DNA from: Octopus sinensis
Lineage: Eukaryota
Assembly: GCF_006345805.1 (NCBI RefSeq)
Contig: NC_043023.1
Span: forward strand, 18,414,001-18,478,000
Direction of reading: 5' to 3'
Length of the DNA: 64,000 bases
Below the pieces are notes generated by a model. That model saw only the letters and a list, made by a program, of their open reading frames with translations. It had not been told where the DNA came from and ran no database searches. Within the stretch, counting starts at the first letter, position 1, and every line of letters starts with the position of its first letter. A program made the position numbers and the translations under genes. Of the stretch, positions 22,445 through 55,855 are shown in pieces.

Positions 22445-22525
<81 letters not shown>

Positions 22526-24889: not shown

Positions 24890-24926
<37 letters not shown>

Positions 24927-27574: not shown

Positions 27575-27642
<68 letters not shown>

Positions 27643-28034: not shown

Positions 28035-28097
<63 letters not shown>

Positions 28098-29888: not shown

Positions 29889-29951
<63 letters not shown>

Positions 29952-30193: not shown

Positions 30194-30262
30194 AATGTTC
30201 TTAACTGGAGAGATTTTCGAAGGATCCGGCTTTGAGTTCTTTTATGTCATTATCATACATAT
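30194..30262 (-). CDS. LRR exon 7 (C-type), 69 nt as assembled
   Basis: cag/gtaagt boundaries. Approximates YLYDNDIKELKAGSFENLSSLRT(L) after restoring 3 T lost in two homopolymers. Confidence 0.65.
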
Positions 30263-31378
30263 CTGTAAGATTAAATTCATTTGAAAAGAAATATCATGAT
30301 TAGGTATCTGATAAAATGACACATATTATGACAAAATAATAAGATGAGGGACAAAGAAAGTAGGTACTGATGAGGATGATTTTCATGATGATGGTGATAA
30401 TGGAGTCGGTAGTAGTGATAAATATGAGGCGGAGGAATGTTACTGGTAGTGGTGATGAAGATACTGTCATGCGGTTGAAGGTGGGAATAATAATATTGGT
30501 TATGATGAAGACAATAATAAGTTAGACAATGTTGATGCTTGAGTACAGAAGATGATGACGAAGATCATTGATGACGGTGGTGGCGAATAAAACGCGACAG
30601 CATAATGATGATGGATGGTGAGCATGGAGGTGATGATTTAGTAGAAGTATTAGATGAAAAGGAAAACTTGTGACATAAGAATAAATTGTATTTCCTCTCA
30701 CACCGTCTCCGATAAAGGGATATTATTACTTAATATCCCAGAAACAGGTGTAAGACCTTCTATCTATAAATGCTCTAATATATAGAGCCTTGTTTTTATC
30801 TCATTACGAAACAAATTCTTATATATACGTATATATATATATATATATATTGTGTGTAATATGTGTGTATGTTTGTCGACAACAAACAGGTGTATTACTT
30901 TAACGCTCGGGAAGTGAAAAATCTTTAACGTTTCGAGTCTAGGCTCCTCCACAGAAAGGAACACAGAAAGAACAAGGATAGATAATAAAGAAGGTGAAAA
31001 AATGAAGAAAATAAAAATAAAAAATAAATGAAAGAATAAAAGAGAATATATATATATAGATAATTATAAATATATATATATATATATATATAGCAAATAT
31101 ATAAACATATTTATACATATCTATACATATATATATATATATATATATACCCATATATACATATATATAAACATGCGTAAGCAAAATGATTACCCAACAC
31201 ACTTTCATATTCCCTCTGAGGACACTTCAAAGATATTCACAAACAATCTCTTACTGAGGGAGAGTGAAAAAATAGGAGAGATTAGTTGAGAGAGCAATAC
31301 AAAGACGATGTGAAGAAATTAAATACTTCGGAATATATTCATCAATGAAATGTTATCACTGAGAGTGTTCAAACTTAC

Positions 31379-31448
31379 ATTTCTCTTAAGCTGGGAAGAT
31401 TCTGGAAGGCTCCTGCATGATTTCCTTAATATCATTTTTAGCGAAACC
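31379..31448 (-). pseudogene. LRR exon 6 (D-type), degenerate: 70 nt, acceptor reads ccg
   Basis: Donor gtaagt is intact. Sequence approximates VxxKNDIKEIHAGAFQNLPSLRE(I) with two deletions; acceptor is ttaccg instead of ttacag. Confidence 0.6.
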
Positions 31449-36600: not shown

Positions 36601-36730
36601 ACAAGACTCAGGTTTTATTTCGGAGATTTCCTTCTCCTAGGTAGATTACCAGCCAAGATTAAATAGCTTCTATAAGCCCATGACGTAAGCTATCCCATCC
36701 CAGACACCAAAGCGACACTCAGACATTCTA
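33690..36730 (-). mobile_element. RTE-clade LINE, degenerate, internally deleted
   Basis: RELLYAEDCDLVSNSQTGLQSLVSAFVSACVDFGLTIDLKK (RT, RTE/BovB-like). Paralog of 47740-51470 lacking about 0.7 kb. Confidence 0.85.
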
Positions 36731-37333
36731 TAAGTGATCAAATATCACTCTGGTGATCGACGTGGAGTAGCACATTCATAAAAAAAAGGAAGAGGTACGA
36801 TATGTGATTTGAAAATGTAAATAAGTATTACATATAAATATAAAAAAGTTAAAGATATTGCGATAAATATAAATGTATATATAAAAGTATACATATAAAT
36901 ACACATATAGAGAATAAAAAGGTATGATGTGTGAATAAACAATATTGTATAAAGAAAAGAAAAAGATAAGCAATTAAAAGATAAAATAAATAATATACAT
37001 AAAGTACAATATACATATATATATAAATATACATATTATATATATATATAAATATACATATATATAAAATATACATACATATATATATATATATATACAT
37101 ATAAAGTTATATGCACATTAAAGAATATTTGTTGGATGGCCGTTGACTGTTCAGGAGTTCATTATACATACATACATACACTTATATATAATCATCATAC
37201 ATACATACCTTAATTACATGCATACATACATACAGGCATCATACATACATAAATATATATACAACACATATATATGCATGTATGTACGTAATGTATGTAT
37301 GTATGTACAGTATGTTATGTATGTATGTATGTG

Positions 37334-37366
<33 letters not shown>

Positions 37367-37565
37367 TTGTTTGTATGCATGCACAAAATGCTTCTCTTGA
37401 TGTATCATATTCACTATATCAACAGGCCCTCGTAGTCCATCACGCAAGTTCACAAACAAATACGTGCTGCAACGGGTGTGTGTGAAATTATACGAAATGA
37501 CAAGTTGAAAGAGCGGGAAAGAGAAGAAGTGCGATGAATATATCAAGAAGACTGGTCTAACTTAC

Positions 37566-37635
37566 AAATATCTTAATTGGGAAGATTTTGGAAGGTTCCT
37601 GGTTTGATTTCGTTTATATGATTGGAATACGTTTC
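37566..37635 (-). CDS. LRR exon 5 (E-type), 70 nt as assembled
   Basis: cag/gtaagt boundaries. Reads KLYSNHINEIKPGTFQNLPNLRY(L) after restoring two single-base deletions; paralog of 52646-52717. Confidence 0.65.
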
Positions 37636-38352
37636 CTGTAACATAAATTTCAGTTGATTAGAAATTGCTTTGTAGAACAATATCGGTGATAAATGTCACG
37701 CATTGTGGATAAAGAACTGGATGATGGGAAAGGTAACTAGATTTAATGACGTTGAAGATCATGATGATGGGTATGATGGTGGCGATGTTAGTGGTAAATA
37801 TTATATGAAGAGGAGGAGGAGGGGGAGGGGGAAGAGAGGGAGAGAAGGAAGAATGTGGTGATGGTGTTGATGACGATGATGTTATGATGCTAATGATGGG
37901 TTAATTAACTTGGTTGTAATTGTAATTTTTGTGAGAGTGTTGTCGATTATGGTTCAGGATACTGATTGATGATGATGTTGATGGTGATGGCGTTATGATG
38001 ATGAAGCAAACGATGATGAACTATACGATATTGATGATTAAAATACAGATGGCAAAAGACCCTGGGGTCATTCATGATGACAAGAACGAGGACGATTAGG
38101 GTTAGGGTGAGGGTAGGTCATGGCGTCGTCGATGGTGGTTGACATAAATAGTACAAGTATTAGTTGAGAAGAAAGAAAAAAAGTAGTTGAGAGAGTAAGA
38201 AGTAAGAAGGAAAAAGGAAAAGAAGTTGAAGAAGAATGAAGAGAAAAGAAGGAACAGAAGAAGAAGAAGAAGAAGAAGAAGAAGAAGAAGAAGAAGACGA
38301 AGAAGGAGAACACATGTTAATACCGTTACATACAAGAATCTATGCACAATAT

Positions 38353-38391
<39 letters not shown>

Positions 38392-40728
38392 GAAATAGAC
38401 ACAATCTTACATAGATCTCTATATATGTATACACATGTACACATCTACGTTTGTGGGCTCGCATGGTGGGGGGCAGAAGTATGTAGAATTGGTGTGTTCA
38501 ATTGTAAATGAGATTAAGATAATAAAGATAATAATTAAGATAATAAAGGAAAGATAATAAAGAAGGTGAGAAAATAAAGAAAATAAAAAGAGAAAATAAA
38601 GTGAAAAAAATAAAAAAGTGCTTAATTGTAAATGAGATTACGATAAAGAAACATTGATCATAGAACAAACATCAATTGAGTTAACGATTTTATATATAAC
38701 ACCATACCTCAATCATTTAGTCATGAAATTACTACCATGGTCCTTAACATATAAAATATACATAGACATAAAATCAGAGAAGGTAAAATTATATATGCGA
38801 ATAAAATAAAAATATATAGAACAGCCTATCAAACAGGTAAATATAAAAAATAAAAAATTCCTAAGAATTATAAAGCGTATCATGCTACCAAAAAAAAACT
38901 AATAAACTAAGATAAAACAAAGTATCAAACGACAAAAATATTTTTAAATGTTCTTTTTAACTCCCTTCACAAAAGTACGTCCAAAAACTTCAATTCTTAA
39001 AACCATGGTAGGTTACAGTCCATGAGCAAAGAGAGTTCCACAAGGTCAATTCAAACAAACCTATGGCCATTTCGATTATATTAAAGTGCATAACGGCATG
39101 TCCCCTCTTCAGGATGAACAGGAACCAGGGAACACGCACAGAGCAAAACTTAAATGTTCATACAACGCCACATGGCTAAATTTAAGATAAACCCGTCATT
39201 GCAGCAAAATTTTCTAACACATAAAGAAACACCGAATTATTTTATTGCTAAACATGGAGGTGGCTGTTGTTAATATAAATTTATACTCGCTGGTTTCAAA
39301 ACCCTATAAATTAACCATTATTACTACATCTACTTTTATTTCTAAACTCTTTCAGAAAAGTAGACGGAAACATATGGGTGTAAAAAGGGATCACCTCAGT
39401 AACTTTATTTAAGCCCAAAAGCCTTAAGGATGGCAAGGGATTCCCTTACACATAACCTATTGAAATTAACTCTGAAATAAGGAGCCCTCGAAATAACAGA
39501 CCATTCAAGAGAATATCTTTTAGTATTCCTCTTTTAACTCTGTATATAAGAATCAAATGTAGTAGAATAACAGTATTCATCGTTGGAAAACGAATTCATG
39601 TGAGCCCTATACATAGTCTTAAGATTTACAGCACTGCCTATATAAAACTTATCCAAATTAACATCCTCTTTAACAAAGCATTTATATATTGTTTAATAGA
39701 GAGGCAAAGCCAATCAAGGAGACATAATACAGTGTTTCTACAATTATACGATTTACCAAAGCCATTCCTAACTTTATTACTACAACTGACATTATTTGTC
39801 TGGCTTCCCACCTTCTTTCCTTCAGATATCCCATACTCTGATTCGATAAGACTGGTGGGAGCAAATTGTTTGTAGCACTAAACTTAGGCATATAGAGCTT
39901 ATTGGCCAGTACCAGGGTTTTCCAGCAGAAGAATACTTCCTCAGCCCTTGCCCAATTAATTTGCTTTATTAAGAGACGCAATAATGGAGGTCATAGTTGG
40001 CGTTACTGAGTAAGAGAATTTTGATGGAAGACTTATTGCAAATGTGCAGTATTTATGATTGTTTGGGAAAATCTTCTTCAGAATCTTAAACAACAATTTG
40101 TCAAGATTCTTTCCCTAAGAGAAAAAGACAGGGGCGAACCATATTGTATCGGTATGCTAGAACGTGAGTTCTTGCTTTCATTATCTCCTCTCTTTCACTA
40201 TTTCGCTCTCTTATCTATTCCTAACATCTTTACATATGTCACCACCTTACAATCTCGATGGACTGGATCCACCCTCTACCAGAACACATGATAACGACCC
40301 ATATATATATATTTACATGCGTGCATAAAATGGTTCGTCTGATGTGTCACACTCACGTATATAAAAACAGATACTCTTATTCCCTCAGAGATGACATTCA
40401 TAAGCAATCATACGTCTTATTAGGGGAGAGAGTGAATATTGGGAGTGAACAAATGAGAGAGTGGGAAAGTAAGGATGTGAAGATATTAAAAATTTAGAAA
40501 GATATTGTCAATGAAATGCTAGCAACAAGTCTGATCTTTACTTACAAGTTCTTAAACTGGAGAGATTTTGGAGGATCCGGGTTGAGTTCTTTTATATCAT
40601 TGTTAGGGAGAGAGTGAATATTGGGAGTGAACAATGAGAGAGTGGGAAAGTAAGGATGTGAAGATATTAAAAATTAGAAAGATATTGTCAATGAAATGCT
40701 AGCAACAAGTCTGATCTATCTTACTTAC

Positions 40729-40800
40729 AATGTTCTTAAACTGGAGAGATTTTGGAAGGATCCGGGTTTGAGTTCTTTTATATCATTGTTATTCAAATAT
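40729..40800 (-). CDS. LRR exon 4 (C-type), 72 nt
   Basis: cag|...|gtaagt; YLNNNDIKELKPGSFQNLSSLRT(L). Confidence 0.85.
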
Positions 40801-42008
40801 CTGTAAGATTAATTCATTTGAAAAGAAATATCATGAATTAGGTATCTGATAAAATGACACATATTATGACAAAAAATAAGATGAGGGACAAAGAAGTAGG
40901 TAATGATGAGAAATGGATTTCATGATGAATGGAGATAATGGAGTCGGTAGTTGTGTTAAATATGAGGCGGAGGAATGTACTGGTAGTGGTGATGAAGATA
41001 CTGTCATGCGTGTTGAAGGTGGAAGAATAATATTGGTTTATGATGAAGACAATAATAAGGTAGACATGTTGATGCTTCATTACAGAAGAAGATGACGAAG
41101 ATCTTGATGACGGTGGTGGCGACTAAAACGCGACAGGATAATGATGATGGATGGTGAGCATGGAGTTAATGATTTAGTAGAAGTATTAGATGAATAGGAA
41201 AACTTGTGACATACAAGAATAAATTGTATTTCCTCTCACACCGTCTCCGATGAAGGATATTATTACTAATATCCCAGAACAGCTGTAAGACCTTCTATCT
41301 ATAAATACTCTAATATCTATAGAGCCTTGGTTTTAATCTCATTACGAAAAAAAAATTTCTTATATATATGAATATATATATATTATATATATATATAGAT
41401 ATATATAGGTATGTATTTGTGTGTGTGTATGTTTGAGCACACATAATGTGTATTAGTATAACGCTCGGGAAGTGAAAAATCTTTAACTTTCGAGCCAACG
41501 CTCCTCCACAGGAAAGATCACAGAAAGAAAAAGGATAGATAAAAAGGAGTGAAAATAAAGAAAATAGAAAGAAAAATAAAGTGAAAAAATGAAAAGAATA
41601 TATAAATATATTTTATTATATATATATATATACAAATATATATATACATAATATACATAAGTACAATATTATATATATATTATATATATATATATAATAT
41701 ATATATATACCATATTTATACATATCTATACATATATATACACCATATATACATGTATATAAGTGTGGGGGTGTGCAAAGTGATTACCCACATGCATCAC
41801 ACACCCGTATATACCAAATGTATACCAACACACTCTCATATTCCCTCTCAGACACATTCAAATCTATGCACAAACAATCTCTTACTGCGGGAGAGTGAAA
41901 ATATAGGGAGAGATTAGTTTGAGAGAGCATACCAGGATGATTGTGAAAATTAAATACTTCGGAATATATCATCAATGAAATGTTATCACTGAGAGTGTTC
42001 AAACTTAC

Positions 42009-42079
42009 AAATCTACTAAGTTGGGAAGTTTCTGAAGGCTTCTACATGGATTTCACTAATATTATTTTCATGTAAATAC
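42009..42079 (-). CDS. LRR exon 3 (D'-type), 71 nt as assembled
   Basis: cag/gtaagt boundaries. Reads YLHENNISEIHVEAFQKLPNLVD(L) after restoring one base; paralog of 22824-22895. Confidence 0.7.
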
Positions 42080-44039
42080 CTGTAATATAAAATTCAGCTG
42101 AGGAAAAATTGTATGCAATACATGTGGTTAAAATTCATTAGGTGATGGTAAAAATGGATGCAGATTAAACGATGATGATAGCGGCGTTATTAGTGATTAA
42201 TGAGAGGAAGAGGGGGAAGTAATAAATGGAGAAACGAGTTAGCGATGATGACGTTGGTATTATTATAGGCATCGTGGTGGGGAGAGTGAAGCCGATTCTT
42301 CTTATAATGATGTTCATATTGTCTTTTTTTATGGAAATTTAAGGATTTATAGGACTGCAAAAAGAAGTGCTCAATTGTAAATGAGATTAAATAAAGAACC
42401 ATTGATCATAGAACAAACATCAAATTGAGTCAACGATTTTATATATAACACATAACCTCGATCATTTAGTCATATGTAAAATTACCATGGTCCTTAACTA
42501 TATAAAATATACTTTACATAAAAACAGAGAAGGTAAAAATATATATGCGAATAAATAAAAATATATAGAACAGCCTATCAAAAGGTAAATATAAAGTCTA
42601 AAATCCTAAGAATTATAAAGCGGTCATGCTACAAAAACAACTAATAAACTAAGGTAACACAAATATCAAACGACTAAAAATATTTTTAAAAGTTCTTTGT
42701 TACTCCCTTCACAAAACGTACGTCAAAAACTTCAATTCTTAAACCATGGTAGGTACAGTCCATGAGCAAAGAGAGTTCCACAAGGTCAATTCAACAAACC
42801 TATGGCCATTTCGATATATTAAAGTGCATAACGGCAATGTCCCTCTCTTCAGGATGAACAGGAACCAGGAAACACACACAGAGCAAAACTAAAACGTTCA
42901 TTCATCGCCACATGGCTAATTGTAAGATAAACCCGTCATTACAGCACATTTCTAACACACATAAGAAACACCGAATTATTTTATTGCTAAAACATGCAGG
43001 TGCTGTTGTGAATAGAAATTTTACTCCGCTATTTTCAAACCCTATAAAATTAACCATTATTTACTACATCTACTTTATTTCTAACCTTTCGGAAAAAGTA
43101 GACGGAAACTTATGGCTGTAAAAAGGGATCACCTCAGCAAATTTATTTAAGCCCAAAGACTTAAGGATGGCAAGGGATTCCCTTACACATAACTTTCACT
43201 TATTTATATTAACTCTGAAATAAGGGCCTCGAAATAACAGACCATCAAGAGAATATCTTTTAGTTATTCCTCTTTAAACTCTGTATATAAGAATCAAGTG
43301 TAGTAGAATAACCGTATTTTTCGTTGGGAAACGAATTCATGCGAGCCCTATACGTAGGCTTAAAATTTACAGCACTACCTAGATACAACTTATCCAAATT
43401 ACCATTCTCTTTAACAAAGCATTTATATATTGCCTTTAGTAGAGAGGCAAGCCAATCAAGGGGACATAATACAGTGTTTCTACAATTATACGATTTACCA
43501 AAGCATTCCTAACTTTATTACTACAACTAACATTATTTGTCTGGTTTCCCACGTTCTTTCTTTCAGATATCCCATTATAGGGGTTCGATAAGACCGTTGG
43601 GAGCAAATGGTTTGTAGCACTAAACTTAGGCATATAAGAGCTTACCTGGCCAGTTACCAGGTTTTCCCCAGCAGAAGAATATTATTCAGCCCTTGCCCAT
43701 TTAAATTGCTTCTATTAGAGACGCAATAATGGAGGTCATAGTTGCGTTACTGAGTAAGAGAATTTGATGGAAGACTTATTGCAATGCTGCAGTATTATGA
43801 TGTTTGGGAATCTTCTTCAGAATCTTAAACAACAATTGGTCAAGGTCTTTCCCTAAGAGAAAAGTCAGGGGCGAACCATTTTATATCCCGTATGCTAAAA
43901 CGTGAGCTCTGCTTTTATTATCTCCTCCTTCTTCCACTATTTCGCTTCCTGTATCTATTCCTAACATCTTACATATGTCACGCCCAGCAATCTCGTTGAC
44001 TGGATCACCCACTACCAGACACACTGATACAAACCCATG

Positions 44040-44118
<79 letters not shown>

Positions 44119-44343
44119 TCATAAAATATAGTTCGTCTGATGTATGACACTCACAGATATAAAACAGAAACTCTCATTCCCACAGACATGACATTCACAA
44201 GCAATCATACGTTCTTATCAGGGGGAGAGAGAGAATATTGGGAGAGAATAGTGAGAGAGTGGGAAAGTAAGGATGTGAAGATATTAAATATTAAGAAAGA
44301 TATTGTCAATGAAATGCTAGAAACAAGTCTGATCTTTACTTAC

Positions 44344-44414
44344 AATCCTCCTAAACTGGGGAGATTTTGAAGGATCCGGCTTTGAGTTCTTTTATATCAT
44401 TGTTATTCAAATAT
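44344..44414 (-). CDS. LRR exon 2 (C-type), 71 nt as assembled
   Basis: cag/gtaagt boundaries. Reads YLNNNDIKELKAGSFQNLPSLGG(L) after restoring one T lost in a homopolymer. Confidence 0.7.
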
Positions 44415-44974
44415 CTGTTAGATTAAATTTTATTTGAAAAGAAATATCATGGATTAGGTATCTGATAAAATGACACATATGACAAATAATAAGATGAGGA
44501 CAAAGAAAGTAGGTAATGATGAGAATGAATTTCATGATGATGGAGATAATGGAGTCGTTAGTAGTGATAAATATGAGTTGGGGGAACGTACTGGGTAGTG
44601 GTGATGAAGATACTGTCATGCGGTCGAAGGTGGGAATAATAATTTGGTGATGATGAGACAATAATAAGGTAGACAATGTTGATGCTTGAGAACAGAGATG
44701 AACGAAGATCTTGATGACGGTGGTGGCGAAAAGAAAGCGACAGGATAATGATGATGGATGGTGAGCATGGTGGTGATGATTTAGTAGAAGTATTAGATGA
44801 ATAGGAAAACTTGTGACATACAAGAATAAATTGTATTTCCTCTCACACCGTCTCCGATGAAGGGATATTATTACTTAATATCCCAGAACAGGTGTAAGAC
44901 CTTCTATCTATAAATGGTCTAATATCTATACAGACTTTGTTTTATCTCATTAACGAAAAAATTCTTATATATAG

Positions 44975-45065
<91 letters not shown>

Positions 45066-46647
45066 TTTATATATATATATTTGTGTGTGTGTGTTGTGTA
45101 TGTATGTTTGTAGACAACAAACAGGTGTATTGCTATCACGCTCGGAAGTGAAAATCTTTACGTTTCGAGCAACGCTCCTCCACAGGAAGGAACACAGAAA
45201 GAAACAAGGAAAGATAAGAAGGAGTGAAAATTAAAGAAAATAAATAGAGAAAATAGAGTGAAAAAAATAAAAAAAAGGGCTCAATTGTAAATGAGATTAA
45301 GATAAAGAAACGTTGATCATAGAACAAACATCAAATGTGAGTCAACGATTTTATATATAACCACCATCCTCAATCATTTAGTCATATGTAAATATTACCA
45401 TTGTCCTTAAACATATAAAATATACATTTACATGAAAACAGAGAAGGTAAAAATATATATGCGATAAAAAAAATTATTATATAGAACAGCCGATCAAAAA
45501 GTAAATATAAAAACAAAATTCCTAAGAATTATAAAGCGTGTCATGCTACAATAAACTAATAAACTAAGATAAAACAACATATCAAACGACTAAAATATTT
45601 TTAAATGTTCTTTTTTACTCCCTTCACAAACGTACGTCCAAAAAGTTCAATTCTTAACCATGGTTTGTTACAGTCCATGAGCAAAGAGAGTTCCACAAGG
45701 TCAATTCAAACACCTATGGCATTTCGATTATATTAAAGTGCATAACGGCAAGTCCCTCTCTTCAGGATGAACAGGAACCAGGACACATGCACAGAGCAAA
45801 ACTAAAAAGTTCATACAACGCCACATGGCTAATTTTAAGATAAACCCGTCATTGCAGCAACATTTTCTAACACATAAAGAAACACCGAATTATTTTATTG
45901 CTAAACATGCAGGTGGCTGTTGTTAAGAGAAATAATTACATCACTTTGTTAATGTGATTAGTGTGTTACTGAGTACACCAACGAAATAGTCAGCTTCTTA
46001 CTGTCAAATTTAAAAACTTATATTTGTTCGTAGTTTGTTTTTTGGGTTTGTAAACAAACTTCTATGTGCTTTCGGTGCAAATGGTTTTGCTAAACGGTGT
46101 CAGTTTTACATTCTGTATTTAAAAATAATGGTATTTTATAAGTTTAAAGCTGATAGCGATCGCCGTGCAACGACTAAGGACAATAGTCTAATAATTGGGC
46201 AAATAAAACCTCGACAGAAAAAAGTAAGCTTTCCCATCCTCGTTGGACTCGAACCCGTATTCTTTTGTTAACGCGTCGACGTCTCACCGTCTATACCAGC
46301 TAAATGGCCTGCTTCTTTATTATTATGTAAAGAAAAGTAAAACTCAACAGCGTCTAATAACTCATTTGCACCGAAAGCGCATAGAAGTTTGTTTAAAAAA
46401 AAAAACACTATGAGCTAATATAGTTCTTAAATTTGACTGTAAGAAGCAGCCTAGCTCGCTGGTATAATCGGTAACACACGTAGGGATTGAGGGATGTGGT
46501 TTCGGTCCCACGCGAATGGGAAAGCCTACTTCTTTTTCTGTCGAGAGTTTATATACTCCATTATTACACTATTTTCCTTAATCATGCACGATGGTCACTT
46601 TAAATTATAAATTACTATATATATACATACACACACACACACACACC

Positions 46648-46708
<61 letters not shown>

Positions 46709-46999
46709 AAATAGCAACAAGAATGATTCCAGTAATTTGGTACAATTGTTTCATACTACAACATTTTATGAAAGCTGTAAATATTACAGCAGATTTAAGA
46801 TGCTGAGTACTCTTCAGCCAATTTATATAGGTTTTCCAATAATATAACAGCTTTCAAATCAAGTCGTAACATTTTAGGGAAGGTAAATATACAGATAAAG
46901 ATGTGAATATGAATCTTAATAACATATGAGGGTATGTAGTTCAGATGCTAACTGACCAAAGCTCTGCTTGCAACTGACTGCTATAAGAAATTTTAGTTT

Positions 47000-47700
47000 T
47001 AGGAATGAGGTAAGGGAAGGTTTTAGAATACCATAAAAGGAATTCAAGTTGGCTGTACTTCTAACAGTAGCTTTCTTTATCTCGGATGTTCGGTGGATTT
47101 TAAAAACGTTTTAAACAACCATTTTTCCTTTTTTAGACTAAAACATAAGGCAGGTTGCACTACACTATCTATCAAAATTTGGGGACTAAAAACAAATAAT
47201 ATAGGATACAACCTAAAATGGGATATAGTTAGAAGGACAAAACCTTATAGTAGGGTAGGCTGTGAACTTTGTTCTATGGAAAACCTATGAAATTTTAAGT
47301 ATCGAAGTATAAAAATCTGTGTGAATAATCGTCTCGAGTTGAGATAATCTTGCATACATTCCACAACTCGAACTTTTAAATACTTTAAATAATTATTTGA
47401 GTATTCCTATATTTTTCAAACTTTAACTTTTTAATATAATAATAATATGAAATATACTATACTAACCTTTATCTTAACTTTCATAGATGACTAGAAAAAC
47501 TTCACTGTAATCTTGAAATTGGAACTTTCCCTAATCTAATCTAGTTTTAAAATTTAAGCTATTCCCCAGTTATAAAATACGATATCTACTAAAAAAAGTG
47601 ATAGTTTTTGTTTTCCCTTACCCTTTGTAAAAGAATTTAATGATCTCTCGACACTGACCTAGTTTACTTCTCACCACATAGAAAAATGGCTTTTTGTTTA
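47000..47700 (+). mobile_element. Penelope-like 3' fragment (GIY-YIG C-terminus)
   Basis: LKTNNIGYNLKWDIVRRTKPYSRVGCELCSMENL matches the KWxI...CxLC..E tail of Penelope endonucleases. Confidence 0.65.
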
Positions 47701-47739
47701 GTGACAACCTGAATTCCTTTATGGAATTCTGAATTCCTC

Positions 47740-50700
47740 CTCTTTCTACAACCAACTTGAATTCCTTTAAGGTATTCTAAAACATTCCCTTACCCTCATT
47801 CCTAAAACTAAAATTTCTTATAGCAGTCTGACGTTGGATTTGCAAGCTTTCTAGCATACATTGCATTCAACGGTCAACACAGACATATAGGCAAAATAGT
47901 TGTTGGAGGTTCGTTTTCCATGCGTTCGCAGATGAGATTTGAGGCCAGCAAAAGACAGGCATGATATGTCACAGACTGTGCATACAAAAGGTCATTGTTA
48001 TTCACCTTTTCGATCGTTACATTCTTCCTTAGATCTCGTTTGAGCCTTATTTGCGTTATCCTCACCCCACTCCACACCTTTGTTCGCCATCCAACTCGAT
48101 CCGAAGCAAGGGTTTCTATATCTTCCGGAACCATTCCAAGTGACTTCATAGTAGTCCTTATACAGTCCTTAAACCTCTTTTTAGATTTACGCCAATAGCA
48201 TTCCCCCTCTGCAAACTCGCCATAAAACAGCTGTTTCGGCATGCGTTCATCTGCCGTTCGAACAATACGGCTACACCATCTCGATTGGTTCCTCAAAATC
48301 ATAGCTTTAATCGAGGTGATGCCTGCAGATGCAAGGACTTCTGTGTTTGGAATAAAATACCTCCTTTTAATTTTTAAAATGCGTTGAAGCATTTTGGTGG
48401 AATTGTTGTAACAGTTTAAAATGCCTTTCATAACAAGTCCAAGTTTCACAGAAATACAACAGGGATGGTAAGACAAATGATATTAAAGTCACAGCTTTGT
48501 ATTCTTATTTATATTTCGCTGGTACCAAACGCGTTACACCAAGCCACCAAATGCTTTTGCTGCCCTTTGAATTCGCTGCTGTATTTCTGTATCAAGATTT
48601 CCATCATTTTGAAGAGAGCCTCCAAGTTAAATGAACGAATCAACAGCCGCGAGTAACTTTCCCTTGACAAAAAATTTTGTGGTTACAAACAGCACCACAC
48701 ACAGGGTGATGCATAACAACTGGTTTTTTTTTCAAGTCGATGGTCAAACCAAAATCAACACAAGCAGAGACAAATGCAGATACCAGAGACTGCAGACCTG
48801 TTTGAGAATTACTGACAAGATCGCAATCTTCAGCGTACAAAAGTTCCCTAATGAATGAAGTAAAAACCTTCGTTTTCAATTTCAGTCTGGTCAGATTATA
48901 AACATTCCCTGTTGTTCGATATTTTATGTAAATACCCTCCTCAGAGTTTTAAAAAGCGATATATATTGCAACAGCATTATATATTGCAAAGAGGGTGGGT
49001 GCATAAAGGTCATTACAGCAGTTTCCACAACAAAAAGATTTCGAGGGCCTACCACTATAAGTAACTTTAGCTTTTTATATCTTGATGCAAAGCTCTGACC
49101 ATATTTACAAATTTTCAGGGCAAACATTTTCTCTAAGAATTAGTCACAGAGCCTTTCGATTAACAGTTTCGAATGCGTTTGCTCAAATCAACAAAGCAAT
49201 GGTATAGAGTAAAATTCTGTTTAATGCACTTTTCTAGTAATTGTCTGACAGTAAAGATACAATCATCTGTGCTCCTGGAGGAACGAAAACCACTCTAAGA
49301 TTCAGACACTATATTTGGAACTATGAAGATATTTAAACGCTCTAACCACAGACGAAAGCGAAATCCCACGATAATTACCACACAGATCCTTTGGCTCCGA
49401 TTTCTTCGAGGAGACTAAAATGGCATCAATCCAGTCTTGAGGTACTTTCTCAGTTCTCCGACAGTGGCAAATTAATATATTTAAGAGTTCAAACATTTTG
49501 TCGACCTTATATTTCAAGACTTCTGCACAGATTCCATCAGACCCTGGATACTTTTTCACAGTTAAATAAATGTCATTCAGAGTTGGTTCAAATGCCATCT
49601 CTTCTATAACTGGAAGGTGATCAATTTTTTTCTATCGTCCCCAGCTCAACGGCTGAGAGTCTATTCAAAAGTGAAGAAAAATATTCTACCCAAAGATTAT
49701 GAATAAAAGCACTGCCAGTCAGAAGAAAATGTCCATTTGCTGTTCTCACTGGAGCAATTGAAGACGATTTGAGGCCATATACCTCCTTCACATAAGACTA
49801 CAAACCCTTGGCATCATTTCTATCAGCTTTTGTGCCCTTTTTGCTCTATCATTTCATCATTACTGTTTAATTTTCCTTGGAGCAGTCTGCACTTTCCTTT
49901 TCAGTTTTCTGTAAACTTCGTTAGAGATGGCGTTCAAGGACTGAGAAAGAAGTGTATTGTGCCTACGTTTTGCTTTTCTAAAAGTAGATTATGAATTTCT
50001 GCTGATCTATCTGAGTACCAGTCACTGGATTTATGAGATTTAAATCCTATTGACGAACTTGCAGCCTGAAATACTTTTGTTTTGAAATCTTCCAATAGAT
50101 TGTTTGGGTCAAGATTGATACTTTCTATAGAATCGTGGAATCTTTGCTTGATAATTTAATGTTTACAACATTTAACTTTTTGGGTACGTTAGGACCAGAC
50201 TGTCGATATTTTAGGCATTATCGAAAAATCTATTTTTCCACGCACTAGATAATGGTCAGTTCAGCTTTCTGCTCTACTCATGACCTGAATGCTAGAAACG
50301 TCTTTCATATCACGTTTCCTGATCAGAATATTATCTATGAGATGCCAGTGCTTAGATCTTGGGTACAACCAGGTGGTTTTATATTTATTTTTCTGCTTAA
50401 ACAGACTGTTGGTGACAACCAGATTATTCTCAGTACAAAACGTCAAAAGAGCTACTCCATTTTTATTGCATTTTCCAATCTCACATCGACCTAAACCAGG
50501 CTATGAAACATAGTCCTTTCCACCTCTTACATTGAAATCTCCCAATATGACCGGCTTGTCAGAAATTGGTACTTTCCTCAATAATTGTGCTAGATCGTCA
50601 AAAATCTGTCCTACAGTTTCATCAGAATGGGACATTGTTGGCGTATAAATACTGACAACGGTAAGAAACCTACCTTTTGTCAGTTTAATATGGCATGACA

Positions 50701-51470
50701 TGGTTCGTTCAGATATACCACTTGGAAGCTCTGCAATGGAGGATACTAATGAATTCTTGAGAGCAAATCCAACACCAGATTCTCTACGTTGACCCTTGTG
50801 TATGCCTCTCCAAAAGATAGTATATCCATAAGTAGGTTCATTTACTTGACCCTTACCAGAGAGACAAATTTCAAAGAGCGCAACTATATCATGAAAATAT
50901 TTCTTGAGCTCACATGCAATAAGTGCAGTACACCTTTCTAGCCTCTAATTGAAATTATCATCGAGACGTGTGCGCACATTGCAGAAACCAAAATTCAAAG
51001 GATGTCTATTTTGCTTTTCCTTGAAGATTGTTTGACCATAGTGGCAGGAGGACGACCGGGTCCCGCCTGTGATACACTGGGACACCTGCCGAGCTAGACC
51101 TGTTCCACTGACGTTCCCAATCCTTTTTTGCCATTTACTGAATCTGTTTGTGACATCTTAGAGTAAGTTACAAGTGAATTTTTAGGTTTCTGCCAACCAA
51201 CCAATTCAATGATTTTTGCCATGGAGTACAGGAAGTACCTGTGCAGATAAATAGTTTTCTGTGGGTGTAGCTTGCACTGCAATATTGGCCCAAGAAGACT
51301 TTCGCCAGTGTGACATAAAAATTGACAAAACCAGGAACATCCAAGATCTCAGGTTTTATTTCGGAAATTTCCTTCTCCTAGGTAGATTACCAACCAAGAT
51401 TAAATAGCTTCTATAAGCCCTTGACGTAAGCTATCCCATTCCAGACACCAAAGCAACACTCAGACATTCT
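47740..51470 (-). mobile_element. RTE-clade LINE, near full length, degenerate
   Basis: Endonuclease (YTPTMSHSDE...VILGDFN; FCTENNLVVTNSLFKQK), RT (DLCGNYRGISL; RELLYAED) and C-terminal AGLKSHLRTH. Confidence 0.9.
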
Positions 51471-51609
51471 ATAATGTGATCAAATATCACTCTGGTGATC
51501 GACGTGGAGTAGCACATTCATAAAAAAGGAAGGTACGATATGTGATTTGAAAATGTAAATAAGTATTATATATAATATAAAAATGTAAAAGATATGCGAT
51601 AAATATAAA

Positions 51610-51995
51610 TCTCTCTCTATATATAAACGGCAGTTTGTCTGTGTGTTTTCTGTGTGTCTGTTTGGTTGTACCCTCACCCTGACCACGGCTTTCAACCGAT
51701 TCTGATGAAACTTGACACACACATAGCCCAATGTCATAATTCAAAACTAACGCAGCGAAAATTTTGAAAAGTTCCCCCAGTTCTGAAAAAGATCGATAAA
51801 TTCGACATGGGGTCGACAATCAGAAACACAAACCACAGATGGTCTAGGGAACGCAACTCGACCTTTTTAACTATCAAAAAAAATTTACCATCATTATTTT
51901 TCCAATTTCTTTGCTATTTTTTTGCTATAACTCTCTAAAAATGCTTTATAGTTATTTCCTTTACAAACCCGAGCAACGCCGGGCGATACTGCTAG
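51610..51995 (+). mobile_element. Non-autonomous Helitron
   Basis: 5' TC, 3' hairpin cccgagcaacgccggg and CTAG. Inserted at A|T (empty site aaatataaa|tgtatat at ~36864). Confidence 0.9.
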
Positions 51996-52645
51996 TGTAT
52001 ATATAAAAGTATACATATATATACACATATAGAGAAATAAAAAGGTATGATGTGTGAATAAACAATTATAAGATATACAATAATATACATAAAGTAAAAA
52101 TATACATATATATATAAATATACATATATATATATATAAATATACATATATATAAAAATATACATATATATATATATACATATAAAAGTTATATGCACAT
52201 TAACAGATATTTTGTTGGATGGCCGTTGACTGTTCAGGAGTTCGTTATACATACATACATACATACATACATACATTTATATACATCATACATGCATACA
52301 TGCATACATACATACAGGCATATAGGCATGCATACATATACATACATAAATATATATACACACATATATATATATATGTATGTACGTAATGTATGTATGT
52401 ATGTACGTATGTATGTATGTATGTATGTATGTATGCATGTTTGTTTGTTTGTATGCATGCACAAAATGCTTCACTTGAGGTATCATATTCACATATATGC
52501 AACACGCACTCGTAGTCCATCACGCAAGTTCACAAACAAATACGTGCTGCAACTGGGCGTGTGTGAAATTATACGAAATGGCAATTTGAAAGAGCGGGAA
52601 ATGGAAGATGCGATGAATATATCAAGAAGACTTGGTCTAACTTAC

Positions 52646-52717
52646 AAAGTTGTTAAATTAGGAAGATTTTGGAAGGTTCCTGGTTTGATTTCGTTTATAT
52701 GATTGAAAGTCAGGTTC
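52646..52717 (-). CDS. LRR exon 1 (E-type), 72 nt
   Basis: ttacag|G AAC CTG ACT TTC AAT...ACA ACT TT|gtaagt = (L)NLTFNHINEIKPGTFQNLPNLTT(L). Exactly 72 nt, phase 2-2. Confidence 0.9.
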
Positions 52718-54186
52718 CTGTAACATAAATTTCAGTTGATTAGAAATTGTGTAGAACAAGATCAGTGATAAAATGTCACGCATTGTGGATAAAGAACTGG
52801 ATGATGGAGAAACGGTAACTAGATTATAATGACGTTGAAGATCATGATGATGGACATGATGGTGGCGTTGTTAGTGGTAAATATTATATGAAGGAGGAGG
52901 AGGGGAAGGGGGGGAAGAGTGGAGGAGAAGGAAGAATGTGGTGATGGTGTTGATGACGATGATGTTATGATGCTAATGATGGGATTAATTACCTTGGTTG
53001 TAATTATTTCTGAGGGTGTTGTCGATTATGGTTCATGATACTGATGATGATGGTGATGGTGATGGTGTTATGATGATGAAGCAAACGATGATGTACTATA
53101 CGATATTGATGATTGAAATACAGATGGCAAAGACCCTGGGGACATTCATGATGACAAGAACGAGGACGATTAGGGTTAGGGTGAGGGTTAGGTCATGGCG
53201 TCGATGGTGGTGACATAAATAGTACAAGTATTCGATGAGCAGAAAAGAAAAAAAATAGTTGAAAGAGTAAGAAGGAGAAAAAGGAAAAGAAGTTGAAGAA
53301 GAATGAAGAGAAAAGAAGGAACAGAAGAAGAAGAAGAAGAAGAAGAAGGAGGAGGAGAAGGAGGAGGAGGAGGAGAAGAAGAAGAAGAAAAAGAAGAAGA
53401 AAAATAAGAAGAAAAAGAAGAAGAAGAAGAAGAAGAAGAACGAGGAGGAGGAGGAGGAGGAGAATAAGGAGAAGGAGAAAAAGGAGAAGAAGAAGAAGGA
53501 GAAGAAGAAGAAGAAGAAAAAGAAGAAGAAGAAGAGAAGAACAAGAACAAGAAGTAGAAGAAGAAGAAGAGGGAGAATGAATGAATGAATGAATGAATGA
53601 ATGAATGAATGAATGAATCACCCTCTTAGAATAGATTTTTCGTAGAAAACGATGAAAAAATAGACATTTTAGCAGGAATTTCAAACCTGATGAATGAAGT
53701 TTTAAATACAGAAATAGAAGCAAGAGTCAATTATAGTAATCAGTGTTAATCTAAAGATAAAAACAGTACATGACATACAGACAGAATTACAAACACATGT
53801 TAATACTGTTGCATACACGAATCTATACACAATATGTGTGTATGTGTGTGTGTGTGTGTGTGTGTGGAAATAGACACACACTTATATAGATCTCTATATA
53901 TGTATACACATGTACACATTTCCGTGTGTTGGCTCGCATGGAGGGCGGGCAGAAGTATGTAGAATTGGTGTGTGCACAGATGTTTGTGTTCATTATGAAT
54001 ACAATTACAGCAGTGACCTTCCTTGACAAATTGCAGCCCTTCTGTCTCTGGCCATCTTCGACTCCCTGCAGTTCCATATTTTTTCGAAGTTCTGCCTTTT
54101 TGGCGAAAAGTCGCGTTAGGATTTTAAAATCTTTAATTAGCACAGAATTTGAGTCAAATAGTTTTCATCCATATATATATATATGA

Positions 54187-55679: not shown

Positions 55680-55855
55680 AGATATTCAATATTCGGTGGA
55701 ATGGGTCGTGGGACCGAAGTCAGGTTGCGAGATGAACAATTTATTCTATTTCCCTGACAACTGCATTTAATGCAAATGTCCAATGCAGCACGAGATTCCA
55801 AAAATAATCTCAAAAAGAGTACCAACACAAAGGTCGATTTAAGTTGATGAAACAT
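55680..55855 (-). CDS. First coding exon of a multi-exon LRR protein: signal peptide + LRR N-terminal cap (LRRNT)
   Basis: Minus strand reads MFHQLKSTFVLVLFLRLFLESRAALDICIKCSCQGNRINCSSRNLTSVPRPIPPNIEY+CT|gtaagt (176 nt, ends phase 2). Hydrophobic leader is followed by CxxCxC-x5-C...LTSVP..IP (LRRNT). Upstream acceptor ttctttaacag gives an exon 5' edge at 55873. Confidence 0.9.

What the first reader, a model, noticed from the sequence alone, without database searches (positions are those of the whole stretch)
37566..52717. Paralogous LRR cassettes differ almost only at concave-face (ligand-binding) positions
Seen: E-type exons 52646 (NLTFN...NLTT) and 37566 (KLYSN...NLRY) share 16 central codons with one synonymous change, but carry 7 substitutions in the five x-position codons at the exon ends, each changing the residue (N/K, T/Y, F/S, T/R, T/Y). 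C-type ends vary likewise (YLNNN/YLYDN/YLHYN; LRT/LVG/LGG/LTT), as do D-types (VLHKN/YLREN/YLHEN; LDA/LNA/LRE/LVD). Established: the x residues of LxxLxLxxN line the concave beta-sheet and are the positively selected sites in VLRs, TLRs and plant LRR receptors. Inference: diversifying selection for ligand recognition. Because the splice junction lies inside this beta-strand, changing which exons are adjacent also creates new surfaces.
Basis: partly seen in the sequence, partly recalled or inferred. Interest (0 to 1): 0.85.

Follow-up and report, generated by a model that had tools for sequence, protein, structure and literature searches.

The report
Octopus one-repeat-per-exon LRR gene diversifying
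This is part of an octopus gene in which each leucine-rich repeat is a separate duplicated 72-base exon, and the copies differ mainly at residues on the likely binding face, a pattern known from other LRR receptors but not yet described for this octopus family.

Summary
The exons lie on the minus strand of an octopus gene. It matches Octopus sinensis XP_036369864.1 ('LRRC15-like'): signal peptide + LRRNT exon (55855-55680), 13 LRR exons of nominally 72 nt plus one fragment, an LRRCT exon (7186-7017), then a C-terminal domain shared with octopus ADGRG6-like adhesion GPCRs. Exon-plus-intron units are tandemly duplicated, with 0.8-9% substitutions between copies.

Within exon types, 23 of 32 changes fall in the five beta-strand x codons: 0.40 steps per site, against 0.07-0.09 in flanking introns and 0.036 in the rest of the exon. 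A second O. sinensis locus repeats this. That favours diversifying selection over relaxed constraint.

Seven of the 14 copies are not open 72-nt exons in this window. E37566 is 70 nt, and the RefSeq protein reads TTYSN there, not KLYSN. Most frameshifts lie in a 37-46 kb stretch with a one-sided excess of single-base deficits (91:17) and are probably assembly errors.

Annotated paralogue isoforms differ by whole 24-residue repeats, which fits the cassette-splicing idea. The closest precedent is the brown-alga LRR-ROCO genes. This is a new member of a known kind and moderately interesting.

The parts
55680..55855 (-). First coding exon: signal peptide plus four-Cys LRRNT cap (MFHQLK...PIPPNIEY, then CT|G)
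   Evidence: It is 100% identical to residues 1-59 of XP_036369864.1.
52646..52717 (-). E-type LRR exon, intact 72 nt (NLTFNHINEIKPGTFQNLPNLTT). This is the first LRR after the cap.
   Evidence: Identical to LRR 1 of P0059.
44344..44414 (-). C-type LRR exon (YLNNN...LGG). It is 71 nt here, with one base missing in a T/C run.
   Evidence: Intact as LRR 2 of P0059. Lies inside the single-base-deficit patch.
42009..42079 (-). D-type LRR exon (YLHEN...LVD). It is 71 nt here (CC reduced to C).
   Evidence: Intact as LRR 3 of P0059. Inside the patch.
40729..40800 (-). C-type LRR exon, intact (YLNNNDIKELKPGSFQNLSSLRT)
   Evidence: Differs by 2 residues from LRR 4 of P0059.
40546..40605 (-). Truncated C-type exon fragment with no acceptor. 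It comes from a tandem partial duplication of about 190 bp whose junction lies inside the exon at about nt 10.
37566..37635 (-). Second E-type LRR exon. It is 70 nt here (two 1-nt deletions). The RefSeq protein reads TTYSNHINEIKPGTFQNLPNLRY.
   Evidence: Inside the patch.
31379..31448 (-). D-type LRR exon (VSHKN...LRE). It is 70 nt here, and the acceptor reads CG instead of AG.
   Evidence: Intact as LRR 6 of P0059. Outside the patch.
30194..30262 (-). C-type LRR exon (LLYDN...). It is 69 nt here.
   Evidence: Resembles LRR 7 of P0059, with 3 residue differences.
26624..26695 (-). D-type LRR exon, intact (VLHKN...LNA)
   Evidence: Not in P0059.
25151..25222 (-). C-type LRR exon, intact (YLNNN...LVG)
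   Evidence: Not in P0059.
22824..22895 (-). D-type LRR exon, intact (YLREN...LVD)
   Evidence: Not in P0059.
21480..21551 (-). C-type LRR exon, intact (YLNNN...LRT)
18059..18130 (-). D-type LRR exon, intact (VLHKN...LDA)
   Evidence: One residue differs from LRR 8 of P0059.
14232..14302 (-). C-type LRR exon (YLHYN...LTT). It is 71 nt here.
   Evidence: Intact as LRR 9 of P0059.
7017..7186 (-). LRRCT cap exon (DLKNNTGMMCGCYLPALVNY...ILEYSECKS)
   Evidence: Identical to P0059 and aligns to the LRRCT of O. vulgaris ADGRG6-like P0074.
1339..1433 (-). Next coding exon (WTNSFVFYLIFNSTLKKFNEYKSSGVNISRA), the start of the C-terminal domain. The gene continues beyond the start of the window.
33692..38310 (.). 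Duplicated block that carries E37566. It is the paralogue of 47743-53377, with 6-9% substitutions.
47743..53377 (.). Duplicated block that carries E52646. It is the paralogue of 33692-38310.
17086..31022 (.). Array of young C/D exon-plus-intron units. Unit pairs differ by 3-8% in substitutions (about 0.8% close to exons D18059/D26624), with paralogues at 38.6-45 kb.
37000..46000 (.). Stretch with a one-sided excess of single-base deficits relative to paralogues (91:17, mostly in homopolymers). It is probably a locally unpolished part of the assembly.

Best explanation
The region is the leucine-rich-repeat part of one octopus gene on the minus strand. The gene is the same as, or a sister-species orthologue of, Octopus sinensis XP_036369864.1 ('LRRC15-like').

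Anatomy (shown): a signal-peptide/LRRNT exon is followed by an array of exons that each encode exactly one 24-residue repeat. Each is 72 nt and is flanked by phase-2 introns that split the Leu-4 codon of LxxLxLxxN. An LRRCT exon follows, and then a C-terminal domain that octopus ADGRG6-like adhesion GPCRs also carry.

History (shown): whole exon-plus-intron units were copied in tandem, as C/D units of about 3.6-4.3 kb and an E-containing block of about 5 kb.

After duplication:
- Shown: scaffold residues stay conserved, at about 0.1 of the intron rate for replacement changes.
- Shown: the five x codons at the two exon ends (x5, x7, x8, x2, x3) change amino acid 3.5 to 8 times faster than the adjacent introns.
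- Partly shown, partly established knowledge: these residues form the beta-strand that lines the concave face.
- Inferred: this reflects diversifying selection on the binding surface.

Splicing: all cassettes are symmetric, so they can be skipped or added without a frame change. Annotated isoforms of paralogues do differ by whole repeats. Whether this generates functional diversity is inferred, not shown.

Frameshifts: most in this window are assembly errors, not pseudogenisation (inferred).
For: Gene identity and anatomy:
- Exon 1 is 100% identical to P0059 = XP_036369864.1.
- P0059's LRRs 1-9, LRRCT and following exon map onto window exons in order.
- LRR and LRRNT similarity to solved LRR ectodomains.
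- The AF2 model of P0059 has pLDDT 77-94 over residues 30-300. Its strands repeat every 24 residues and straddle each exon junction (also for P0002).

Duplication of exon-plus-intron units.

Rate contrast:
- Parsimony steps per site: x codons 23/58, other exon positions 8/220, introns 166/1832, or 60/825 within 120 nt.
- Counting replacement and silent changes separately (Nei-Gojobori), with the intron rate as the neutral yardstick: x codons 10 against 2.85 expected (P = 7e-4); non-x codons 1 against 9.6 (P = 7e-4).
- Local profile for the E pair: 0/24 | 4/15, 1/44, 3/11 | 0/23.
- Empirical intron-window P = 0.004 for the E pair and <4e-4 for C21480/C25151.

Replication elsewhere:
- O. sinensis L001 exons 17471 and 34899 differ at 6/15 x-codon nt, 1/57 other exon nt, and 3 of about 175 nt of downstream intron.
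- At protein level, within-type variation at x sites against other sites is 20:12, 9:3 and 10:3 in P0059, P0071 and P0108.

Frameshifts as artefacts:
- Single-base deficits are 91:17 in 37-46 kb against 35:29 in 29-36 kb.
- The same exons are intact in P0059.
- Single-base indels hit these exons about as often as the introns: 4 in the four sister-pair exons, against about 4 expected by my count. Exon-centre substitutions are depleted.

Isoforms: lengths of 409/385/361/337 aa and 525/501/477 aa; X1, X2 and X3 of XP_029657302 each lack one LRR.
Against: - No codon-model test was run. The excess rests on about 10-15 events, several of them multi-nucleotide clusters that may be single mutations.
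- Without the E pair, the youngest sister pairs show no excess (3 against 1.9).
- About 27% of intron mismatches are also adjacent to another mismatch, so Poisson P values are too optimistic.
- The same residues recur at x sites in different exon types (R at x2 in C, D and E; Y at x7; V at x2). That would also fit exchange between cassettes.
- There are no expression data for this gene in this genome.
- P0059 omits four window exons and contains one LRR (VLAYN...LTD) that the window lacks.
- Ligand and function are unknown.
Confidence: 0.62

Rival explanations
1. Relaxed constraint only. The x positions are simply free to vary while scaffold positions are constrained, and the apparent excess over introns comes from small numbers and clustered mutations.
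For: - The four youngest sister pairs show x-codon change at about the intron rate (3 against 1.9).
- Intron mismatches are also clustered (27% are adjacent to another mismatch).
- 5.7% of intron windows reach 7 or more mismatches in end-sized segments.
Against: - Neutral drift cannot exceed the neutral rate. Here x codons run at 0.40 steps per site against 0.07-0.09 in introns.
- The specific pattern (diverged ends, conserved centre and flanks) has empirical P = 0.004 for the E pair and <4e-4 for the C pair.
- It recurs independently in O. sinensis L001: 6/15 against 3 of about 175.
- All x-codon changes in the sister pairs are replacements (Sd = 0, Nd = 10).
Confidence: 0.15
2. Recombinational mosaicism. 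Unequal crossing-over and short-tract gene conversion between cassettes homogenise exon centres and nearby intron. They also import blocks of differences at exon ends, which mimics site-specific acceleration.
For: - Duplication junctions lie inside exons: C40531 at about nt 10, and L001 34658-34699 at nt 44.
- Flanks within 120 nt are less diverged than more distal intron.
- In the L001 pair, the upstream intron is about 9% diverged and the downstream intron about 2%.
- Identical x-codon states recur across exon types.
Against: - No donor for any variant exon end exists in the window within 0-1 mismatches, apart from its own sister copy.
- A conversion tract would have to skip 10-16 nt at each exon end while homogenising both the exon centre and the intron directly abutting that end (0/24 and 0/23 in the E pair).
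- Even so, retaining such mosaics would still imply selection for, or tolerance of, new x residues.
Confidence: 0.15
3. Sequencing or assembly artefact. The clustered differences at exon ends are consensus errors in a poorly polished repeat region.
For: E37566, D41996 and C44338 lie in a 37-46 kb stretch with a strongly one-sided excess of single-base deficits (91:17). Both E37566 indels sit in its variable ends.
Against: - Substitution rates in that stretch are no higher than in neighbouring blocks (7.8% against 6.3-8.7%).
- The E37566 x residues (Y, S, R, Y) are present in the RefSeq protein.
- The same pattern occurs between intact exons in the clean 17-30 kb part (C21480 vs C25151) and in another locus and assembly.
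Confidence: 0.03

Closest known systems
Brown-alga LRR-ROCO genes (Ectocarpus, Saccharina; Zambounis et al. 2012; PMC11378527)
   Same: - One LRR per 72-bp exon, with the same intron phase throughout.
- Tandem exon duplication and shuffling.
- Variable sites on the concave beta-sheet reported as positively selected (PAML M2/M8).
- Alternative splicing of tandem LRR exons.
   Different: - A different kingdom and a different protein architecture (LRR-ROC-COR GTPase against a secreted or ectodomain LRRNT-LRR-LRRCT).
- The split-codon position differs: their exon nt 3-71 encode the repeat, here nt 2-70 do.
- Here the selection claim rests on an intron-rate comparison, not on codon models.
Octopus-specific adhesion-GPCR expansion with LRR N-termini (Ritschard et al. 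2019, PMC6408891, 'group 3'; O. vulgaris 'ADGRG6-like' CAJ1099246.1 and CAI9743462.1)
   Same: - The same signal-peptide/LRRNT exon family.
- The same LRRCT and following C-terminal domain.
- The O. sinensis locus of P0059 lies within a 1088-aa LRR+GPS+7tm_2 gene on the other strand.
- Branch-level positive selection was reported for the group.
   Different: - No GPS or 7TM is present in the window or in the 461-aa RefSeq model.
- The paper found no positively selected sites and did not analyse LRR cassettes or their exon structure.
Vertebrate LGR and glycoprotein-hormone receptors, and Slit
   Same: LRR ectodomains built from exons of about 72 nt with uniform phase-2 introns. This comes from my own knowledge and from the citation of Koo et al. 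1991 in PMC11378527. LGR4, LGR5 and Slit2 are among the sequence and structure neighbours.
   Different: Those repeats are ancient and orthologously conserved. They are not recently duplicated with still-alignable introns, and they are not known for x-site hypervariability between exon paralogues.
Jawless-vertebrate variable lymphocyte receptors (VLR)
   Same: LRRNT plus 24-residue LRR modules, with diversity concentrated at concave beta-strand x residues. VLRs are among the best structural matches to the P0002 model (TM 0.7-0.76).
   Different: VLR cassettes lack splice sites and are assembled somatically by a gene-conversion-like process. Here every cassette has AG/GT splice sites, lies on one strand, and is joined by ordinary splicing in the RefSeq model.

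Membership tests
Extracellular 'typical' 24-residue LRR proteins with Cys-rich caps | Repeat consensus LxxLxLxxNxIxxIxxGxFxxLxx of 24 residues | tested here: met
   All 13 exons fit the consensus. phmmer gives E values of 1e-30 to 1e-64 to IGFALS, LRIG1, LRRC15, LGR4, TLR3, NgR and VLR.
Extracellular 'typical' 24-residue LRR proteins with Cys-rich caps | N-terminal LRRNT cap (CxxCxCx6C) after a signal peptide | tested here: met
   Exon 1 reads ...DICIKCSCQGNRINCSSRNLTSVP....
Extracellular 'typical' 24-residue LRR proteins with Cys-rich caps | C-terminal LRRCT cap | tested here: met
   Exon 7186-7017 reads ...MMCGCYLPALVNY...RGQCQ...YSEC. It is identical to P0059 and aligns with the LRRCT of P0074. 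My first motif scan missed it.
Extracellular 'typical' 24-residue LRR proteins with Cys-rich caps | x2, x3, x5, x7 and x8 lie in or next to the beta-strand of the concave sheet | tested here: met
   AF2 models of P0059 and P0002 have strands every 24 residues covering x3-x7/x8 and straddling the exon junctions. That this sheet lines the concave face is established knowledge; it was not measured on coordinates here.
Exon-per-LRR cassette genes with shuffling and selection (brown-alga LRR-ROCO type) | One LRR per 72-bp exon with uniform intron phase | tested here: met
   The same holds in O. sinensis L001 and O. bimaculoides L002.
Exon-per-LRR cassette genes with shuffling and selection (brown-alga LRR-ROCO type) | Recent duplication or shuffling of LRR exons together with their introns | tested here: met
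   The window's self-comparison shows units about 84-96% identical (BLAST), including introns.
Exon-per-LRR cassette genes with shuffling and selection (brown-alga LRR-ROCO type) | Positive selection at concave-face sites shown by codon site models | tested here: inconclusive
   The proxy tests are positive: x codons run 3.5-8 times the intron rate. PAML and MEME were not available, and independent events are few.
Exon-per-LRR cassette genes with shuffling and selection (brown-alga LRR-ROCO type) | Alternative splicing of tandem LRR exons | not testable with these tools
   No RNA data were available. Indirect evidence comes from RefSeq isoform series of paralogues that differ by multiples of 24 aa.
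Exon-per-LRR cassette genes with shuffling and selection (brown-alga LRR-ROCO type) | ROC-COR GTPase domains | tested here: not met
   The P0059 architecture is LRRNT-LRR-LRRCT plus an unrelated C-terminal domain. The resemblance is therefore an analogy, not membership.
Adhesion GPCRs (octopus-specific LRR-bearing group) | GAIN/GPS motif and 7TM (7tm_2) | tested here: not met
   Neither appears in the 461-aa model P0059 (its sequence, and its Pfam listing), and nothing in the window pointed to them. Relatives have them: P0074, and a 1088-aa neighbour in O. sinensis. The gene runs off the start of the window, so absence is not proven.
Adhesion GPCRs (octopus-specific LRR-bearing group) | Shared ectodomain modules (LRRNT-LRR-LRRCT plus a membrane-proximal domain) | tested here: met
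   BLASTP of P0059 against P0074 gives E = 5e-39 and covers the cap, the LRRCT and the C-terminal domain.
Lamprey and hagfish VLR system | Germline cassettes without splice signals, assembled somatically into an incomplete gene | tested here: not met
   Twelve of the 13 full-length cassettes have a canonical AG acceptor and all 13 a GT donor (D31366's acceptor reads CG). All lie on one strand behind exon 1, and nine of them are collinear with a spliced RefSeq model.
Dscam-type mutually exclusive exon clusters | Only one exon of a cluster is included per mRNA | tested here: not met
   P0059 includes nine of the window's cassettes in series. The isoforms differ by skipping, not by substitution.

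The most novel reading that the evidence does not exclude
The LRR cassette arrays of this octopus-specific family may act as a diversity generator. The family comprises secreted LRR proteins and the ectodomains of LRR-bearing adhesion GPCRs. Recurrent tandem exon duplication, positive selection on beta-strand residues and combinatorial skipping of symmetric 72-nt exons would together give each gene many binding surfaces. That would be a recognition repertoire analogous to Dscam, protocadherin or brown-alga ROCO diversity. It could be used in the octopus peripheral nervous system, the suckers, or in immunity.
Probability: 0.2. Interest if true: 0.7.

Novelty: new member of a known kind. Interest (0 to 1): 0.4.

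Why it matters
Cephalopods have expanded recognition and adhesion families such as protocadherins and adhesion GPCRs. No diversified LRR receptor system has been described for them in the papers I could search.

This locus shows, at exon resolution, how an octopus LRR ectodomain grows and diversifies. Whole repeat-plus-intron units are copied, and the binding-face residues then change faster than neutral sequence.

Ritschard et al. 2019 found branch-level selection in the related adhesion-GPCR expansion but could identify no selected sites. The LRR x codons are a concrete candidate for where that selection acts.

There is also a practical point. Tandem, near-identical cassettes are where long-read assemblies keep homopolymer errors, so exon arrays like this one can be miscalled as pseudogenes.

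Tried and rejected
- Word-indexed protein searches. A search with the concatenated intact LRRs gave only generic LRR hits at 35-54% identity. A search with exon 1 plus two LRRs returned nothing. Only the exhaustive HMMER search with exon 1 found the true gene product.
- LRRCT motif scan. My regular-expression scan found nothing because the motif was too strict. The LRRCT exon was later located by tblastn with P0059.
P0002 and P0059 were modelled instead. The C-terminal domain of P0059 is modelled at pLDDT below 50 and has no PDB sequence match, so I do not name its fold.
- BLAST-based map of 1-nt indels. It overstated symmetric gaps in diverged pairs because it traded mismatches for paired gaps. 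I replaced it with MAFFT pairwise counts.
- 'Private change' counts per copy are confounded by the tree shape and were not used.
- A search for in-window donors of the variant exon ends, to test micro gene conversion, found none.
- An early reading that half the cassettes are pseudoexons. I dropped it for E37566, D41996, C44338 and C14217 once they proved intact in XP_036369864.1. It stays open for D31366 (acceptor CG) and C30179, which lie outside the error-prone stretch, and it holds for the fragment at 40546-40605.
- DNA for the O. sinensis locus of P0059 could not be fetched because the gene range is 229 kb. No nucleotide-level orthologue comparison was therefore possible.
- The transition/transversion ratio at x codons (E pair: 1 transition, 6 transversions) against introns (349:420) rests on too few sites to be informative.

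Full report
**What is at the coordinates.** Both 'E-type' exons exist, on the minus strand, with canonical splice signals: ttacag|exon|gtaagt. The window is eukaryotic, AT-rich and full of microsatellites and retroelement remnants.

A self-comparison shows that about 14-53 kb is built from tandemly duplicated segments. These include the introns and are about 84-96% identical.

A sensitive scan finds 14 LRR exon copies, all on the minus strand. In order of transcription they are:
- E52646
- C44338
- D41996
- C40729
- a 60-nt C fragment at 40605-40546
- E37566
- D31366
- C30179
- D26624
- C25151
- D22824
- C21480
- D18059
- C14217

Each intact copy is 72 nt: 1 nt, then 23 codons, then 2 nt. The intron therefore splits the Leu-4 codon of LxxLxLxxN (TT|G or AT|G). 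By the standard definition this is phase 2.

**What the gene is.** Upstream, at 55855-55680, lies an exon for a signal peptide plus a four-cysteine LRRNT cap.

An exhaustive HMMER search with this exon found a 461-aa protein that is 100% identical over it. That protein is XP_036369864.1, 'leucine-rich repeat-containing protein 15-like' of Octopus sinensis.

Its ten LRRs map onto the window cassettes in order:

| P0059 LRR | Window cassette | Match |
|---|---|---|
| 1 | E52646 | identical |
| 2 | C44338 | identical once the missing base is allowed for |
| 3 | D41996 | identical once the missing base is allowed for |
| 4 | C40729-like | 2 residues differ |
| 5 | E37566 | read as TTYSN...NLRY |
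| 6 | D31366 | VSHKN...LRE |
| 7 | C30179-like | LLYDN... |
| 8 | D18059-like | 1 residue differs |
| 9 | C14217 | identical once the missing base is allowed for |
| 10 | none (VLAYN...LTD) | absent from the window |

After the LRRs come an LRRCT exon, found identical at 7186-7017, and the next exon, identical at 1433-1339. The rest of the gene lies beyond the start of the window.

The window also carries four cassettes that the RefSeq model lacks: D26624, C25151, D22824 and C21480. The window therefore comes from O. sinensis or a very close relative such as O. vulgaris, and it holds most of one gene.

The LRRCT and the C-terminal domain align with O. vulgaris 'ADGRG6-like' adhesion GPCRs, which continue into GPS and 7TM. 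In O. sinensis the locus lies within a 1088-aa LRR+GPS+7tm_2 gene on the other strand.

Ritschard et al. 2019 described an octopus-specific adhesion-GPCR expansion. LRRs occur in 5 of its 22 members, and it is expressed in axial nerve cord, suckers, skin and gills. They reported branch-level positive selection but found no selected sites.

Neither the 461-aa RefSeq model nor anything I found in the window shows a GPS or 7TM, so I do not file this gene as a GPCR.

**The frameshifts.** Seven of the 14 copies are not open 72-nt exons as assembled:
- E37566 is 70 nt, with two 1-nt deletions, one in each variable end.
- C44338, D41996 and C14217 are 71 nt.
- C30179 is 69 nt.
- D31366 is 70 nt, and its acceptor reads CG.
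- One copy is a fragment.

For two of them the RefSeq protein gives a different repair: TTYSN and LLYDN.

All the lesions are deletions and most are in homopolymers. MAFFT comparisons of paralogous introns show that copies in 37-46 kb are one base shorter than their partner 91 times and longer 17 times. Copies in 29-36 kb give 35:29, and pairs within 17-31 kb give 3:5, 5:3, 2:6 and 5:5. Neutral evolution cannot make two paralogous introns this asymmetric.

Single-base indels hit these exons about as often as the introns. I count 4 in the four sister-pair exons, against about 4 expected. Substitutions in exon centres, by contrast, are about ten-fold depleted.

The same exons are intact in the RefSeq protein. 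The simplest reading is a locally unpolished long-read stretch. D31366 and C30179 lie outside that stretch, so they may be genuinely damaged in this genome. The fragment at 40605-40546 is a true partial duplication with its junction inside the exon.

**Testing the central claim.** I defined the x codons as x5, x7, x8 (exon codons 1, 3, 4) and x2, x3 (codons 22, 23).

Within exon types, minimum parsimony steps per site are:

| Region | Steps / sites | Rate |
|---|---|---|
| x codons | 23/58 | 0.40 |
| Rest of the exon | 8/220 | 0.036 |
| Flanking intron | 166/1832 | 0.09 |
| Flanking intron within 120 nt | 60/825 | 0.073 |

Of all within-type steps, 23 of 32 fall in these five codons (permutation P = 1.4e-4). 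The odds ratio against introns is 6.6-8.4.

I also counted replacement and silent changes separately (Nei-Gojobori), with the intron rate as the neutral yardstick. For five independent sister pairs this gives:
- x codons: 10 replacement changes against 2.85 expected (P = 7e-4), and no silent changes.
- All other codons: 1 replacement change against 9.6 expected (P = 7e-4).

The local profile of the E pair is striking. The 24 nt of intron on each side are identical. The exon ends differ at 4/15 and 3/11. The centre differs at 1/44.

Intron mismatches are themselves clustered: 27% are adjacent to another mismatch. So I replaced the Poisson test with an empirical one, sliding the exon geometry along the paralogous introns. 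The E pattern occurs in 0.43% of windows. The C21480/C25151 pattern (4 or more mismatches in the last 11 nt and 2 or fewer elsewhere) occurs in 0 of 2377 windows.

Caveats:
- Without the E pair, the four youngest pairs show no excess (3 against 1.9).
- VLHKN-type and YLREN-type D exons differ throughout (19 of 72 nt, 11 of them outside the x codons).
- Many changes are di- or tri-nucleotide clusters that may be single events.

**Replication outside the window.** In a paralogous O. sinensis locus (L001, gene XP_029657302.2), exons 17471 (NLAEN...LET) and 34899 (YLSHN...LKT) differ as follows:
- 6 of 15 x-codon nucleotides, all replacement changes.
- 1 of 57 other exon nucleotides, a silent change.
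- 3 of about 175 nt of downstream intron.
- None of the last 25 nt of upstream intron.

At the protein level, within-type variation at the five x sites against the other 19 positions is 20:12 in P0059, 9:3 in P0071 and 10:3 in P0108.

AF2 models of P0059 (pLDDT 77-94 over the LRRs) and P0002 place a strand every 24 residues. The strands cover x3 to x7/x8 and straddle each exon junction. This fits the textbook placement of these residues on the concave sheet.

**Interpretation.** Relaxed constraint cannot push a rate above neutral, so it is insufficient by itself.

Recombination is clearly active here. Duplication junctions lie inside exons, near flanks are less diverged than distal intron, and x-codon states recur across exon types. 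But no in-window donor exists for any variant end. A conversion tract would also have to skip just the 10-16 nt at each exon end.

Assembly error does not explain the substitutions. They are present in the RefSeq protein, they occur between intact exons in the clean part of the window, and they occur in another assembly.

I therefore favour diversifying selection on the beta-strand residues after tandem exon duplication, at moderate confidence. It is not proven by codon models, and the ligand is unknown.

**Splicing.** All cassettes are symmetric. RefSeq isoforms of paralogues differ by whole repeats:
- X1, X2 and X3 of XP_029657302 each drop one LRR.
- One gene has 13 isoforms of 409, 385, 361 or 337 aa.
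- Another gene has isoforms of 525, 501 or 477 aa.

No RNA data were available to me.

**Comparison with what is known.** The closest described system is in brown algae. Their LRR-ROCO genes have one LRR per 72-bp exon, a uniform phase, exon shuffling, PAML-supported selection at concave sites and alternative splicing of LRR exons (PMC11378527). That is an analogy, since the octopus gene has no ROC-COR domains.

The exon architecture also recalls LGR and gonadotropin receptors and Slit. VLRs are close structural neighbours, but the mechanism differs: ordinary splice sites here, against somatic assembly there.

My literature searches found no description of this octopus cassette system.

**Verdict.** This is a real and statistically supported example of a known phenomenon, in a family and phylum where it has not been described.

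Noticed in passing
window 37000-46000: Copies in this stretch are one base shorter than their paralogues 91 times and longer only 17 times, mostly in homopolymers. Neighbouring stretches are symmetric. This looks like a locally unpolished long-read patch, and it creates false frameshifts in at least three exons.
   Followed up: yes
window 7187-14231 (minus strand): The tenth LRR of XP_036369864.1 (VLAYNDIRKIESGAFQNLPSLTD) should lie between C14217 and the LRRCT exon. No trace of it was found by tblastn or pattern search. It is either deleted in this genome or missing from the assembly.
   Followed up: partly
window 21351-29900: Four intact cassettes (C21480, D22824, C25151, D26624) have no counterpart in the RefSeq protein. 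The block is a recent composite duplication: a copy of the 40.6-45 kb unit plus a copy of the D18059 unit, with 3-5% substitutions. It may be a copy-number difference or exons that the annotated isoform skips.
   Followed up: partly
window 40546-40605; L001 34658-34699: In both octopus loci, duplication junctions fall inside LRR exons (at exon nt about 10 and nt 44). This suggests that the conserved exon cores serve as substrates for unequal recombination.
   Followed up: partly
all LRR exon donors in the window, e.g. 52640-52647; P0002, P0007, P0008, P0009, P0010: Every cassette ends ..TT|gtaagt or ..AT|gtaagt, so an unspliced donor reads Leu/Met followed by TAA. The short RefSeq models of paralogues (86, 133 and 157 aa) all end exactly this way. 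Any cassette could therefore act as a terminal exon, or those models are truncated.
   Followed up: no
window 37566-37635 and 31379-31448 (P0059 residues 156-161 and 180-185): In two cassettes the normally invariant Leu-6 of LxxLxLxxN is replaced: by T in TTYSN and by S in VSHKN. Here the diversification reaches a core scaffold position.
   Followed up: no
window 55600-56155 vs L001 and L002: The signal-peptide/LRRNT exon differs by 18-23% at the nucleotide level between family members. That is no less than its flanking intron (about 15%). Only the cysteines and the IPPN[IV]EYL end are conserved, so the whole family evolves fast.
   Followed up: partly
window 2596-3832 (+), 47874-48476 (-), 61226-63086 (+): Retroelement remnants. 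One is a CCHC zinc-knuckle ORF. Others are reverse-transcriptase ORFs broken into several frames. One RT fragment sits inside the intron between E52646 and C44338.
   Followed up: no
window 451-890, 4149-4549, 56118-56538, 57473-57889: A dispersed repeat of about 400 bp (85-89% identical copies, in both orientations), presumably a SINE-like element.
   Followed up: no
window 11648-11909, 12704-12888, 15848-15976, 22380-22577, 53269-53570, 54171-54317, 59494-59681, 63530-63661: Long microsatellites: (TTC)n, (AAG)n, (TA)n and (TATC)n. Several lie in the introns of the LRR array, and they account for much of the length difference between duplicated units.
   Followed up: no
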